Shown here: positions 10,593 through 31,407 of the stretch, piece by piece | Numbering within the stretch: the stretch's first letter is position 1 | Layout of the letters: the number at the start of each line of letters is the position of its first letter | Assembly: GCF_003704095.1 (NCBI RefSeq) | Contig: NW_020847620.1 | Span: 1-64,000, forward strand | Direction of reading: 5' to 3' | DNA length: 64,000 nucleotides | Origin: Pocillopora damicornis | Lineage: Eukaryota | Made by a program: the position numbers and the translations under genes | The notes under the pieces: generated by a model | What the model was told of the DNA's origin: nothing | Databases searched by the model: none | What the model saw: the letters and a program-made list of their open reading frames with translations, nothing else

Positions 10593-13500
10593 TTACTTAG
10601 ATGTCATCATCTTGACAAATTCTGTATAGAGAAAAAAAAAGTTAACACTGCTGCCATTTGCTAAGAAAACATAATTGTTACTGCATGTTCATGGCTACAG
10701 AGAATGAAACAACAATTTGGCTGATCTGCCAATTAAGAGCATCCATCAGTTGACCACATAAACCTTTACACCCTGCATACACACTGTATTCTGTATTTAT
10801 TGACATAAATCAACAGCTTGTTCAGTTGATGATCATTTCCTTTATTCTTGTGACAATGTGTGATTCAGGGGTGATACTGTGAGGAAATATTAAATGTTAG
10901 TCACTCTTAAGGCACACAGGATCTAACCAACCATGATTTCGGAAGAGCTGGTTCAATTGAACTGCAGCCCCATGGTTGGAGAGAGGTATTACAAATATCT
11001 CTTTATGACAACTGCACTCTGCAGAGTAAGGGTTACCTTCATAATTGACTTGCCCATCTCCATCAATGTCTGCTTCTCGGATCATCTCATCAACTTCCTC
11101 GTCTGTAAGTTTCTCTCCCAGGTTTGTCATCACATGTCGCAACTCAGCAGCACTAATGAAACCATTTCCATCTTTGTCAAACACTCGGAAAGCTTCTCTG
11201 ATTTCTTCCTCACTGTCAGTATCCTTCATTTTCCTTGCCATCATGGTGAGAAATTCAGGGAAATCAATTGTTCCATTACCTGTTTCAAAAAAATATAAAT
11301 TCTTGGTCAATTCCATGACCCGGAAATCAACCAAATGATAAATAAAATGGAATCCATCACCCATTGCAAAAGTGATGTTCAACTATGTGCCAGCATGTCA
11401 TCACTAGCTGTAGTTTCATTAGAGATCAGAATTGTATTAAATCCTCTCACTCTCTTGAGTGACCAAGAGAGAATTTCTTCTTTCAGTATCAATATTATCT
11501 TAAACAGACAAGTGATGAGAATGGAGAAAGGAATCACTTAGGGGATTATCAGTTGATCCAATACTAAATTCTCTGAACCAACATCACAAGAATTGTATAG
11601 AATTAGTAAATTAGATCTTAAAAGTCTAGCTAGTAACTTGTTTGTGGAACCACTCTTAGAAATAACACAAATTTCCAGCATCTCACATCAGGCACTGGCC
11701 AATGCACATTTCGTCGCAGAACATGGATACCAAGCTTTCACCAATCCTTAATTTTGAAACTACAGTTTTTGATCCAATATAAAGAGTCATTGTACTTTTT
11801 GCTGTTCATTTATTCTGTGCCTAATTCAAAGCTGCATTCTTGCCAAGGAAATTTTCCAGGTTAATCATTACATACCATCTGCATCAACTTCATTGATCAT
11901 ATCCTGAAGTTCTGCTTCAGTTGGATTCTGTCCTAGAGATCTCATCACTGTTCCAAGTTCCTTAGTGGTGATTGTACCATCTCCATCCTTGTCAAAGAGC
12001 GAGAACGCTTCTTTGAATTCTGAAGATAAGGCAGAAACAAGTAATGGGTATGATAATTTGCTTAGTTGAACAGAGCTCATATTACACCGTTAGGATCCAT
12101 TGGATTAATTCTTTTGAATTTGTGTATGGTGCAAATGATGACTAGCCAACTGGAATTCAAAGGAGATAATACAGCACTACCAATTACAGAGAGTTCTGAA
12201 ATAGAGGAAGTACCATGTAAGTGAAACCTAACAACCAAAACTAGTTATTATCACTTTCTTCAATTTTTATATATATATTTTTCCCCACAGTTTGGTTTTT
12301 TATTATTTGCCATGTATTTGCAAACATTTGATTTTGGCCCTAAACCATCTAAGTGGGCACTTATCCCATGTGATATCGCAAAATGCACAATAAATCACAG
12401 GTAACTCTTAAAACTTAAACATCTTTCTCTCCACCTTTAAGAAAGAGTAAACACCAAAAATGCTAGAAAAAATGGTCTTCACTTACCAGCAATCTGTTCT
12501 TCTGTAAGTTGATCAGCCTGAAAAACAAACAAATATTAGTTCTAATGAGATAACAACAGAAAAAGTTATCGCCAGATCTGTCACTGCTCAAGAGGAGAGT
12601 ATGCGAAAAATAGGATTTGATCACACCAGCATCTGTCAGAAATATCATGCATTGTACAAATCCTTGACAGCTGAAATATTCTGCTCTCAAAAACTAACAT
12701 CTCAGTCCAATAATTCTTTTTCATTGGCAAAAAAGTTTATCAAGAAGCTGATTACAATTCTTAATTTCTGGTTTGCTTTAAAACACAATATGTGTACTTA
12801 TTCTGAATGACTGCTACAGCTATATATTTTTATATTCTTTGTACATATTGGTTACCCTCGGATGAAAGAAAGTCTGTGAGCACTGTGAGCATTTGAACTT
12901 AACCAATTCCCTCCAAGGTTCCTTAAAGGATGCCATAAGTTTTAAGACTAAGGTCTTGCACCAGTCCTTTGCAAGAACCATAAAATCCCAGCTTAAGAAT
13001 TCAATTGTAGTCTCTGTGTAAGTCATTACCAAGGTGACCATGCTTACATAAAGCAAAAATAAATTGGTCAAGCAAAAAAGGTGCACAAACACACAACAGT
13101 TTTCCAAGATCCTGGATATGAAGAAATTGGCAGTCCTTAAATCAGGGGCAAAATTTCAAGAATTTACTGTGAACATATGAGGTTTTGAAGTAATACTCTT
13201 GCAAAGATTAGCACACCAATGTGTGCAGGTGTTGGACTGCATATATTATACCTATGCAACATCTGTAGGCAAGGACAATCATGCTTTTCATATTTTCTTC
13301 CAACAAGTAAGACGACCTTAAGGTATAGAATTTGCTCAATGTTTGTAACACACTGATTAATTCTTCCTTTGAAAAGCACACAACATGGAAATAATTTGTA
13401 AACAGGATGCCTTTGACTAGGGCAGCTGCAGACGGCAGTTGAAATCACTCCCTTAATCAATAATTCAATGGTTCCCTAACTTAAAGTGAAAATTTTCATA

Positions 13501-14108
13501 TTCTTTTTGGAGCAAAGATGCAAAACGACTTCCCCAGAAGTTGTGCCAGAAATAATTCTTAGTACTTCCGTTTTACAAACAGAATGGTATATTTGTAAAA
13601 AGGTCAATTAAGTTGGAAAGAAATGTTTACACAAAAGCAAACATGCATAATATATTAACCAGAATGGTTTACATCGATGAAGAGGGTTTCAAAGACTGCT
13701 CTGATTTAAAATTACAGATTCAAAGCGGATTTTTTTGGCAGTGAACCCACGACCATAAGCTTAAAGTTCTGCACCATGTGGGGATTCCATTAGCTAACTC
13801 AATTAGGATTGTCACGACACTAAACACAAGACATGCAACGATAACGCACAAGGCGATCCTTTGTAAACTATACATTCTGCTATAATTAAAATAGTTGCTG
13901 ATTTAACTCGTAAGATCTTAAAAACAATCTACGAAAACAACGTATTCACATCTAATCGCGGAAGAAATTAAGCAGACAAGATTTCAGGAGCATAATAACA
14001 GCTAAAATTGGACTAAACGAAAGTTCTTTGCGCTGACCTATAACAGACAAGTTTAGATATTATCAGTTGGTTAATTTTTATGTCATAAATTGATGAAAAT
14101 CTTACCAT
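10593..14108 (-). CDS. CaM: Calmodulin, canonical invertebrate type, 149 aa (CaM-1)
   Basis: Exons 14108-14106 (ATG only), 12517-12487, 12019-11876, 11279-11037, 10621-10593 = 450 nt. Protein [26 protein letters not shown]...[13 protein letters not shown]...GFISAAE...[10 protein letters not shown]. Confidence 0.98.
11437..11620 (-). mobile_element. MITE family B copy in CaM-1 intron 3
   Basis: Reverse complement of the 6890-7100 element. Confidence 0.7.
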
Positions 14109-30800: not shown

Positions 30801-31407
30801 ATTTTTGCGGATTCGTCCTGCAATTTGCTTAAGATTAATTAATGAAACAAGTAGAAACAAAAATAATTAAAGCTAATATTGGTAAATATTCAAGGGATTT
30901 TTCTGATTGTTTACAAGCGTCTGAACGCCCTTTCCTCTCGAAGATTCTGGCGAACTTTCATTCACGAATTTAAAGGAAATTTAAATTGTAGGACTCTAAA
31001 GATTCAAAACCATTTGCTTCTAGTTATATATTTTCAGAAGCAAAATTTACGCCGTTAACTGTCTTTTCATCTGCTGCTTCTAGCTGCATATTACTCCAAT
31101 GGTGGATAAAAATTCTGCAGCAACCACTGAAGCACATAAAGATGTAGGAGGCAAAATTTTCACGAAAGAAGCGTTAACTTTTTGTGAAATGCTCTCGATT
31201 AAGTCAGCTTTGTGTCGCCTTTTTTTGAAACAGGGAAAGATTAATATAATTCTTAAATTTTGCTGCAAGAATTCGATGGGCTGCGTTTCGAAATGATTGC
31301 TGTTTGTGTCTCGTTTTAATGTACGAAATGTTATTGAAATATAATTTCACTTCACAAGAACACCTGAATGCTACAAGGAAAGCATTTGATCATCTTTAAC
31401 TCACCAT
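27860..31407 (-). CDS. Divergent calmodulin-like protein, 147 aa (CaML-5)
   Basis: Exons 31407-31405 (ATG|gtgagt), 29652-29625, 29440-29297, 28789-28550, 27888-27860 = 444 nt, with the same intron positions as CaM. Loops [48 protein letters not shown]. Confidence 0.9.

What the first reader, a model, noticed from the sequence alone, without database searches (positions are those of the whole stretch)
10593..31407. Tandem calmodulin cluster with a gradient of divergence (CaM, CaM 5' end, CaM variant, two CaM-like genes)
Seen: five loci in 21 kb share the CaM architecture (ATG-only exon, 28-31-nt exon, 144-nt exon, 240-243-nt segment, short last exon), and divergence from canonical CaM increases along the array. 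Known: CaM is extremely conserved, and the three mammalian CALM genes are dispersed and encode one protein. Inference: a local birth-and-specialisation series of Ca2+ sensors with distinct targets or cell types, of interest in a calcifying, cnidocyte-bearing animal.
Basis: partly seen in the sequence, partly recalled or inferred. Interest (0 to 1): 0.75.

Follow-up and report, generated by a model that had tools for sequence, protein, structure and literature searches.

The report
Old calmodulin gene cluster in a coral
A coral genome keeps its standard calmodulin gene next to a near-identical variant, a half-assembled third copy and two old, expressed calmodulin-like genes, which is a real but fairly ordinary gene-family cluster.

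Summary
Between 10593 and 31407 lie four complete calmodulin-family genes and one 5' part. All share the invertebrate CaM layout with AG/GT borders. L1 (-) matches a protein named calmodulin of Acropora cervicornis in 145 of 145 in-exon residues. L3 (+, inverted) differs from L1 at 5 of 145 residues, with dS 0.63 and dN/dS 0.03. L4 and L5 (-) are 59% and 48% identical to L1.

RNA contigs from three studies show every tested intron of L4 and L5; a DNA-like run shows none. Both genes have relatives in many other assemblies, and L4's extra intron is kept in 19 of 19 genomic relatives. A diverged coral contig carries L5 and L4 orthologues in the same order and strand, with pN/pS 0.06-0.07.

The gap at 14866-14965 lies in non-coding DNA, so no reading frame crosses it. 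It hides or replaces exons 3-5 of L2, and L1's link to the rest rests on that scaffold join.

The "gradient" is only a rank order of three or four genes. The exon-4 tree is star-like, and the genome holds other CaM-like tandem groups. The scan has not found this on other DNA.

The parts
14106..14108 (-). L1 (canonical CaM) ATG at the end of exon 1
   Evidence: AAAATG followed by GTAAG. Not tested by RNA.
12487..12517 (-). L1 exon 2, 31 nt
   Evidence: AG/GT borders, peptide [10 protein letters not shown]. The peptide is present in P0193.
11876..12019 (-). L1 exon 3, 144 nt
   Evidence: (EF-hand families).
11037..11279 (-). L1 exon 4, 243 nt
10593..10621 (-). L1 last coding exon, 29 nt including the TAA stop
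14237..14288 (-). L1 upstream block shared with L2 (CC-A/T-rich-GG palindrome and CCAAT-like box)
   Evidence: blastn gives 54 nt at 78%. Alignment A1.
14866..14965 (.). Assembly gap, 100 N
   Evidence: It lies 536 nt downstream of L2 exon 2 and 757 nt upstream of the L1 ATG. No frame crosses it.
14966..15420 (.). Interspersed repeat copies next to the gap
   Evidence: 705 first-look candidates in the genome, with 59 scored matches elsewhere at 83-100% identity. The left flank 14400-14865 is single copy.
15502..15532 (-). L2 exon 2, 31 nt
   Evidence: AG/GT borders. 30 of 31 nt and 10 of 10 aa match L1 exon 2.
16620..16622 (-). L2 ATG at the end of exon 1
   Evidence: ATATG followed by GTAAG. 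Inferred.
16769..16820 (-). L2 upstream block shared with L1
17756..17758 (+). L3 (CaM variant) ATG at the end of exon 1
   Evidence: AAAATG followed by GTAGG. Inferred. It is head to head with L2, with 1133 nt between the two ATGs.
18929..18959 (+). L3 exon 2, 31 nt
19222..19365 (+). L3 exon 3, 144 nt
   Evidence: 93% nt identity to L1.
19945..20187 (+). L3 exon 4, 243 nt
   Evidence: The exact peptide recurs in P0076 and P0082.
20426..20454 (+). L3 last coding exon, 29 nt
26315..26371 (-). L4 exon 1: 5'UTR ending in ATG (26315-26317)
   Evidence: RNA joint 24786/7 to 26314/5 in X1 and X5. A contig ends in adapter sequence at 26371.
24757..24787 (-). L4 exon 2, 31 nt
   Evidence: RNA joints on both sides in 2 of 3 RNA runs.
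24413..24556 (-). L4 exon 3, 144 nt
23654..23799 (-). L4 exon 4a, 146 nt
   Evidence: RNA joint to exon 3 in 3 of 3 RNA runs.
23156..23252 (-). L4 exon 4b, 97 nt, after a private phase-0 intron of 401 nt
   Evidence: Spliced relatives P0048, P0049, L022 and L024 read across the junction. 19 of 19 genomic relatives break at the same place.
22402..22436 (-). L4 last coding exon, 35 nt
   Evidence: Its peptide is also the C-terminal end of relative P0049.
31405..31407 (-). L5 ATG at the end of exon 1
   Evidence: AAAATG followed by GTGAGT. Inferred; it lay outside the stretch on which reads were laid.
29625..29652 (-). L5 exon 2, 28 nt
   Evidence: RNA joint 29440 to 29625 in 3 of 3 RNA runs.
29297..29440 (-). 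L5 exon 3, 144 nt
28550..28789 (-). L5 exon 4, 240 nt
27860..27888 (-). L5 last coding exon, 29 nt
   Evidence: Best acceptor in the scan. RNA joint 27888 to 28550 in 3 of 3 RNA runs. Relative P0015 ends with nearly the same peptide.

Best explanation
This is a genuine cluster of calmodulin-family genes in a stony coral, probably a Pocillopora. It was made by old local duplications of a five-exon CaM gene and has been kept by purifying selection.
- L1 encodes the standard cnidarian calmodulin.
- L3 encodes a second, near-canonical isoform with five conservative changes. It is transcribed away from L2 from a shared 1.1-kb spacer.
- L2 is a third CaM-type promoter, ATG exon and exon 2. Its remaining exons are either inside the assembly gap or lost.
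- L4 (151 aa) and L5 (147 aa) are four-EF-hand calmodulin-like sensors. They left the CaM sequence long ago, are transcribed and correctly spliced today, and have stayed neighbours in at least one diverged coral.

Shown: gene structures, expression and splicing of L4 and L5, selective constraint, orthologues elsewhere, and L5-L4 synteny. Inferred: origin by tandem duplication, Ca2+ binding by all loops, and separate target sets for the paralogues.
For: Structure: shared exon sizes, phases and AG/GT borders. This is the same five-exon plan, with an ATG-only first exon and no intron in exon 4, that is reported for abalone and sea-squirt CaM genes (passages of PMC6171432).

Identity: all four L1 exon peptides occur, each one residue apart, in P0193 'Calmodulin [Acropora cervicornis]'. 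All 8 of 8 exon peptides scanned hit EF-hand Pfam families above cut-off. Calmodulin is the best solved-structure match for L5 exon 4 (aligned to CaM 62-138) and L4 exon 3 (aligned to CaM 13-59).

Not an artefact: L1/L3 have dS 0.63 and no alignable introns. L1/L2 are alike only over 43 nt around exon 2 and over a 54-nt promoter block.

Expression: in RNA contigs of three studies, L5 shows 3 of 3 tested introns in 3 of 3 runs. L4 shows 3 of 3 tested introns in 2 runs and 1 of 3 in the third. The DNA-like run X19 shows 0 of these 6 joints, and its contigs are colinear with the window.

Constraint: L1/L3 omega is 0.03. Window against L019 gives L5 115/126 aa identical with pN 0.048 and pS 0.68, and L4 113/127 with pN 0.050 and pS 0.89.

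Age and conservation: 32 relatives of L5 exon 4 (73-100% identical) and 29 of L4 exon 4a. In one search, 21 fetched L4-type rows were 40-48 of 48 identical. Seven longest-contig lengths are shared between the two hit lists. L019/L021 carry L5 then L4 on one strand.
Against:
- L1 is joined to the rest only through a 100-N scaffold gap.
- No third near-canonical exon 4 exists anywhere in the assembly, so L2 may be a dead fragment.
- The exon-4 tree does not show that the window genes form one clade, so a local origin of L4 and L5 from this CaM gene is inferred from position and shared intron plan only.
- Synteny was seen in one other species only, and only for L5-L4. No CaM exon was seen in the 3.1 kb after L4 in L019.
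- The taxa of the relatives are unknown.
- L5's fourth loop has Ser where Gly-type residues are usual, and L4's first loop has Gly at the fifth position, so full Ca2+ binding is not assured (read; the rule is recalled).
Confidence: 0.85

Rival explanations
1. A stepwise local birth series: each gene arose from its neighbour in turn, so that position along the array records age and divergence.
For: Identity to L1 falls monotonically with distance. L5's best paralogues in the whole genome are L3 and L1, both at 45%.
Against: - Only three fully scored genes are ranked, a chance of 1 in 6.
- L4 and L5 are less like each other (62/142) than either is to CaM. This fits separate departures from a slowly evolving CaM rather than a chain.
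- The tree is a star.
- L3 is inverted.
- More CaM-like paralogues (71%, 61%) sit on other contigs.
Confidence: 0.15
2. L2 is a complete third CaM gene whose exons 3-5 lie in the unread gap.
For: L2 has an intact ATG exon and an exon 2 with good splice sites, coding the same 10 residues as L1. It keeps a promoter block shared with L1. The gap starts 536 nt into its intron 2, next to a high-copy repeat. The source assembly is short-read plus proximity-ligation scaffolding, and is said to lack up to 14% of non-repetitive content (passages of PMC6208414).
Against: No third near-canonical exon 4 exists anywhere in the assembly. The gap's true length is unknown.
Confidence: 0.45
3. L2 is a dead 5' fragment left by a partial duplication or deletion.
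For: Only two exons are assembled, and there is no orphan 3' part elsewhere.
Against: Exon 2 has only one change, a synonymous one, against L1, while the introns are unalignable. The splice sites and promoter block are kept. That pattern suggests continued constraint or gene conversion.
Confidence: 0.3
4. The L1-L2 adjacency is a scaffolding mis-join, so the canonical CaM gene is not part of the cluster.
For: The only link is a 100-N gap flanked by a repeat. The window has three such gaps.
Against: Two CaM-type promoters with a shared block, on the same strand and 2.5 kb apart across the join, would be an odd coincidence. Proximity-ligation joins are mostly right (general knowledge, not tested).
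Confidence: 0.1
5. The copies are assembly artefacts (haplotype duplicates), or L4 and L5 are pseudogenes.
For: The source is a heterozygous short-read assembly.
Against: Introns are not alignable between any pair, and L1/L3 dS is 0.63. All frames are open with canonical splice sites. There are spliced RNA contigs in three studies, and pN/pS is 0.06-0.07 against an orthologue.
Confidence: 0.02

Closest known systems
Multiple canonical calmodulin genes of invertebrates (four CaM genes of the abalone Haliotis discus hannai; PMC6171432, abstract and passages seen)
   Same: - Five exons and four introns at identical positions and phases.
- A first exon holding only the start codon, and no intron in the fourth exon.
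- Isoforms that differ by a few residues, with most nucleotide changes at third codon positions.
- Non-alignable introns.
   Different: The abalone paper says linkage of its genes is unknown. Here the copies lie within 10 kb, one of them inverted, and they are flanked by two much more divergent CaM-like genes.
CaM plus CaM-like genes of amphioxus (Karabinos and Bhattacharya 2000; seen only as a citation in PMC6171432, content recalled)
   Same: A canonical CaM coexists with divergent CaM-like paralogues that keep the CaM gene plan.
   Different: I could not read that paper, so arrangement and divergence cannot be compared.
Tandemly duplicated genes of corals (Noel et al. 2023, PMC10236652; abstract and passages seen)
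   Same: Local duplication is described as pervasive in coral genomes, including Pocillopora. Such genes are said to be hard to assemble from short reads, which fits the broken L2.
   Different: That paper stresses immune and disease-resistance families. 'Calmodulin' and 'EF-hand' do not occur in its main text, and its supplements were not seen. The duplicates here are old and strongly constrained rather than recent amplifications.
Vertebrate CALM1-3
   Same: ATG-only exon 1, 31-nt exon 2, 144-nt exon 3 and a short last coding exon (recalled). An extra intron found only in the human genes is stated in a figure legend of PMC6171432.
   Different: Here the copies are linked and encode different proteins. 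L4's extra intron splits the 243-nt segment 146/97, which is not the vertebrate position (the vertebrate position is recalled).

Membership tests
Calmodulin proper | About 149 residues made of four EF-hands | tested here: met
   L1 and L3 are each 149 codons by summing exon pieces and split codons. Their exon peptides hit EF-hand families. L4 has 151 and L5 has 147.
Calmodulin proper | More than 90% identity to accepted CaM (the threshold used in PMC6171432) | tested here: met
   L1 matches P0193 'Calmodulin [Acropora cervicornis]' at 145 of 145 in-exon residues. L3 matches L1 at 140/145. This is NOT met by L4 (86/145) or L5 (68/143), so those two are not filed as calmodulin.
Calmodulin proper | Invertebrate CaM gene plan (ATG-only exon 1, then 31, 144, 243 and a short last exon) | tested here: met
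   L1 and L3 fit exactly. L5 fits with 28 and 240 nt. L4 fits with one added intron. L2 shows the first two exons only.
Calmodulin proper | Ca2+-dependent binding and activation of CaM targets | not testable with these tools
   Needs protein work.
Calmodulin-like (CaML/CML) EF-hand sensors | Four EF-hand plan with CaM as the nearest characterised relative, but identity far below CaM | tested here: met
   L4 and L5 hit EF-hand families. Their top solved-structure matches are calmodulin at homologous positions. They are 59% and 48% identical to L1.
Calmodulin-like (CaML/CML) EF-hand sensors | Loops able to bind Ca2+ (oxygen ligands at loop positions 1, 3, 5 and 12, small residue at 6; rule recalled) | tested here: inconclusive
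   Read. Six of the eight L4 and L5 loops fit. L4 loop 1 has Gly at position 5. L5 loop 4 has Ser at position 6, where relatives have Asn or Asp. L5 loop 3 ends in Asp.
Tandemly duplicated gene cluster (criteria of PMC10236652: same contig, at most 10 genes apart, e-value at most 1e-20 over 80% of the shorter protein) | Co-location on one contig | tested here: met
   L2 to L5 lie on one gap-free stretch, 14966-64000. L1 lies across a 100-N gap.
Tandemly duplicated gene cluster (criteria of PMC10236652: same contig, at most 10 genes apart, e-value at most 1e-20 over 80% of the shorter protein) | Whole-protein similarity threshold | tested here: inconclusive
   L1/L3 clearly pass: exon 4 alone gives 1.5e-45. 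For L4 and L5 against CaM, only single exons were compared (about 1e-13 for L5 exon 4). The joined-protein comparison was left out by rule.
Processed or decayed pseudogene | Loss of introns, frame breaks, no transcription, neutral evolution | tested here: not met
   Introns are kept and frames are open. There are spliced transcripts for L4 and L5, and omega is far below 1. L2 remains open.

The most novel reading that the evidence does not exclude
L2 is neither a broken gene nor a hidden third gene. It is a duplicated promoter, ATG exon and exon 2 module that splices into exons 3-5 of L1. The coral would then make the same calmodulin from two differently regulated 5' modules, one of which shares a bidirectional spacer with the variant gene L3. 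More broadly, the array CaM / CaM variant / CaML-4 / CaML-5 would be an anciently conserved, jointly regulated Ca2+-sensor locus of stony corals.
Probability: 0.1. Interest if true: 0.5.

Novelty: new member of a known kind. Interest (0 to 1): 0.3.

Why it matters
Calmodulin is among the most conserved animal proteins, and most invertebrates were long thought to have one gene for it (introduction of PMC6171432).

This locus puts several things on one stretch of DNA: the standard gene, a constrained isoform, and two old, expressed CaM-like sensors whose adjacency is kept in a diverged coral. That gives coral biologists named, verified gene models for asking which Ca2+ sensor acts in calcifying cells, cnidocytes or symbiont-bearing cells.

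It also flags a likely assembly loss of a CaM copy in a widely used short-read reference. It does not reveal a new kind of system.

Tried and rejected
- **Naming the relatives.** The listing of cluster members returned no names or accessions for 10 of 10 clusters, so the taxa of the relatives stay unknown.
- **Tracing the L3 isoform and CaM linkage in other assemblies.** The word search with the L3 exon-4 frame was swamped by calmodulins of all eukaryotes (6555 hits, 120 listed). None of the listed contig lengths equals the seven shared by the L4 and L5 lists, which shows nothing either way.
- **Exon-4 tree.** The tree of 25 rows has 11 of 22 inner branches open, so it cannot place L4 or L5.
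- **Polymorphisms in RNA contigs.** Of the 40 listed differences, 7 lie in exons: 4 are synonymous and 3 are not. A further 26 were not shown. That is too few and incomplete, so I did not use them as a test.
- **Contig depth.** Depth is much higher for L5 (244-1604) than for L4 (26-73) in the same runs. The tool warns that depth cannot rank genes, so I make no claim.
- **Literature.** Four searches found no paper on a cnidarian CaM cluster, and plant CaM/CML papers dominate. This covers only the held open-access library. Supplements were closed and never opened, and those of PMC6208414 and PMC10236652 may list these genes.
- **Big protein search, structure prediction and atlas search.** Not run, because the family scans left nothing open.
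- **Spliced models.** All searches used single exons or single unbroken open frames.
- **Haplotig or artefact reading.** Rejected.
- **PEX10 anchor.** Only a RING-finger exon at 3947-4276 (-) was confirmed. PEX10 identity was not tested.
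Full report
**What is there**

Reading both strands of 10400-31700 and fixing the borders by script gives five loci.
- L1 (-): ATG 14106-14108, then exons 12487-12517, 11876-12019, 11037-11279 and 10593-10621.
- L2 (-): ATG 16620-16622 and exon 15502-15532 only.
- L3 (+): ATG 17756-17758, then exons 18929-18959, 19222-19365, 19945-20187 and 20426-20454.
- L4 (-): ATG 26315-26317, then exons 24757-24787, 24413-24556, 23654-23799, 23156-23252 and 22402-22436.
- L5 (-): ATG 31405-31407, then exons 29625-29652, 29297-29440, 28550-28789 and 27860-27888.

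Every one of the 20 listed exons after the ATG exons is preceded by AG. Each is followed by GT unless it holds the stop codon. Adding exon pieces and split codons gives 149, 149, 151 and 147 codons for L1, L3, L4 and L5. The finding's borders are the L1 stop codon and the L5 start codon.

The five-exon plan, with a first exon holding only ATG and no intron in the fourth exon, is what a paper on abalone CaM genes reports for abalone and sea squirt (PMC6171432, abstract and passages).

**The gap**

The window has three runs of exactly 100 N. Only 14866-14965 lies in the finding.
- On the minus strand the gap starts 536 nt after L2 exon 2 and ends 757 nt before the L1 ATG. No exon or reading frame crosses it, so the 'in frame' question does not arise.
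- Its right flank (14966-15420) is made of interspersed repeats, with 705 first-look candidates in the genome. Its left flank is single copy.
- No EF-hand exon lies between 12100 and 19200. The whole assembly holds only two near-canonical copies of exon 4, namely L1 (100%) and L3 (95%); the next best is 71%. L2's exons 3-5 are therefore either in the unread gap or do not exist.
- L1 and L2 are alike only over 43 nt around exon 2 (97.7%) and over a 54-nt upstream block. L2 is thus a separate old locus and not an assembly duplicate.
- L2 to L5 sit on one gap-free stretch. L1 is tied to them only by this scaffold join.

The assembly size (234,350,878 bases in 4393 pieces) matches the 234-Mb short-read plus proximity-ligation assembly of Pocillopora damicornis. 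That paper also says up to 14% of non-repetitive sequence may be missing (PMC6208414, passages). The species name is an inference from the size match.

**What the genes are**

- All 8 of 8 exon peptides scanned match EF-hand Pfam families above their cut-offs.
- All four L1 exon peptides occur, each one residue apart, in P0193, which its source names 'Calmodulin [Acropora cervicornis]'.
- L3 differs from L1 at 5 of 145 in-exon residues (T>S, R>K, K>R, D>E, A>S), with 37 synonymous differences. This gives dS 0.63, dN 0.02 and omega 0.03. The introns do not align. L3's exact exon-4 peptide recurs in two database ORFs of close relatives (P0076 and P0082).
- L4 is 86/145 and L5 is 68/143 identical to L1, and they are 62/142 identical to each other. 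Synonymous sites are saturated.
- Among solved structures, calmodulin is the best match for L5 exon 4 (aligned to CaM 62-138) and for L4 exon 3 (aligned to CaM 13-59).

L1 and L3 meet the tests for calmodulin proper. L4 and L5 fail the identity test and are filed as calmodulin-like.

**Expression**

Four runs were laid: polyA or cDNA RNA runs of three different studies (X1, X5, X8, kept as contigs) and one DNA-like run (X19).
- L5: joints 27888/28550, 28789/29297 and 29440/29625 appear in 3 of 3 RNA runs.
- L4: joint 23798/24412 appears in 3 of 3 RNA runs. Joints 24556/24757 and 24786/26314 appear in 2 of 3.
- All skipped pieces have the minus-strand GT..AG ends and the exact predicted lengths (661, 507, 184, 613, 200 and 1527 nt).
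- X19 shows none of these six joints, and its contigs run colinear with the window.
- One further listed joint (28226/28266, X5 only, TA..AT ends) lies in an L5 intron and is not a predicted junction.

L4's private intron and last intron, the L5 ATG exon, and all of L1, L2 and L3 lay outside the stretch and are untested in this species.

**Relatives, age and constraint**

Searches used single exons or single open frames only. By rule, the joined spliced proteins were not searched.
- The L5 exon-4 frame found 32 proteins, 73-100% identical over the exon. Thirty of them are genomic ORFs that run on into the intron. One (P0015) is spliced and ends with nearly the same last-exon peptide.
- The L4 exon-4a frame found 29 proteins. 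Of the 21 fetched, all are 40-48 of 48 identical. Nineteen are genomic ORFs that diverge immediately after the last residue of exon 4a. Two (P0048 and P0049) are spliced and continue into exon 4b, and P0049 ends with L4's own last-exon peptide. L4's extra intron is therefore old and shared.
- Seven 'longest contig' lengths (1567812, 1053285, 831284, 449455, 352470, 217713 and 124556) occur in both hit lists. This points to linkage in other assemblies.
The single metagenome scan returned two contigs, L019 and L021, which are 99.9% alike and so count as one species. In them an L5 orthologue (exon 3 at 98% and exon 4 at 87% aa identity) lies 6.7 kb upstream of an L4 orthologue (87-91%) on the same strand. 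The private intron is present there at 160 nt.
- Only exons align to the window at the DNA level, at 75-87%.
- Counted on in-exon codons, L5 is 115/126 identical with pN 0.048 and pS 0.68. L4 is 113/127 identical with pN 0.050 and pS 0.89. Both genes are strongly constrained and older than this species split.
- L022 and L024 are spliced L4-type transcripts.

**The 'gradient' and the 'birth series'**

The rank order is real, but it rests on three fully scored genes, and L3 is inverted.
- A tree of 25 exon-4 rows gives strong clades for the L4 lineage (99/99) and the L5 lineage (100/100), but a star elsewhere.
- Holding all window genes together costs 4.7 log-likelihood units (p-AU 0.268), so that grouping is neither shown nor rejected.
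- The genome has other groups of CaM-like exons within tens of kilobases on at least ten other contigs, for example C2022, C2911, C1619, C804, C373, C335, C625, C4382, C1579 and C3511. Some are closer to CaM than L4 or L5 are.
- L5's nearest paralogues genome-wide are L3 and L1 at 45%. L4's are C2022 at 58%, then L1 and L3 at 54%.

The simplest reading is several old duplications from a slowly changing CaM gene. It is not a chain in which position records age.

**How it likely works**

L1 supplies standard calmodulin. L3 supplies a near-identical isoform under its own promoter, divergent from L2's. L4 and L5 are small four-EF-hand sensors. Read against the usual loop rule (recalled), six of their eight loops look competent. 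L4 loop 1 has Gly at position 5, L5 loop 4 has Ser at position 6, and L5 loop 3 ends in Asp. Target sets and cell types are inferred to differ but were not tested.

**Comparison and novelty**

[quoted passage not shown] Tandem duplication is described as pervasive in corals, although 'calmodulin' and 'EF-hand' are absent from that paper's main text (PMC10236652; supplements not seen). Four literature searches found no description of a cnidarian CaM cluster in the held library.

This is a new member of a known kind. The gene models are solid and useful, and the surprise is modest.

Noticed in passing
window 14237-14288 and 16769-16820 (minus strand): The L1 and L2 promoters share a block holding a CC-(A/T)6-GG palindrome (serum-response-like; the name is recalled) and a CCAAT-like box at the same spacing. 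In my three-way alignment L3 shows it only weakly.
   Followed up: partly
window 16620-17758: L2 and L3 are head to head with 1133 nt between their ATGs, which may be a bidirectional promoter.
   Followed up: no
window 14966-15420, 11440-11541, 9949-10049: A high-copy interspersed repeat of about 100 nt (at least 705 candidate copies in the genome) borders the gap. It also sits in L1 intron 3 and downstream of L1.
   Followed up: partly
window 3947-4276 (-): There is a C3HC4 RING-finger exon (Pfam E 2e-8). Two more 100-N gaps lie at 1439-1538 and 2823-2922.
   Followed up: partly
G000 contigs C2911 (85-131 kb), C2022 (190-200 kb), C1619 (116-133 kb), C804, C373, C335, C625, C4382: These are other tandem groups of CaM-like genes, many with an uninterrupted 240-nt fourth exon. 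C2911:115667-115897 carries an in-frame TAA and may be a pseudogene.
   Followed up: partly
window 14470-14620: A short tandem array of GACGCA-type units lies just upstream of the L1 promoter block.
   Followed up: no
window 26450-27270: Low-depth RNA contigs on both strands lie between L4 and L5 in two RNA runs. They may be read-through or an unannotated transcript.
   Followed up: no
L019 1045-10400: In the diverged coral contig, L4's private intron is only 160 nt (401 nt here, 1079 nt in L020), and the L5-L4 spacing is 6.7 kb against 4.0 kb here.
   Followed up: yes
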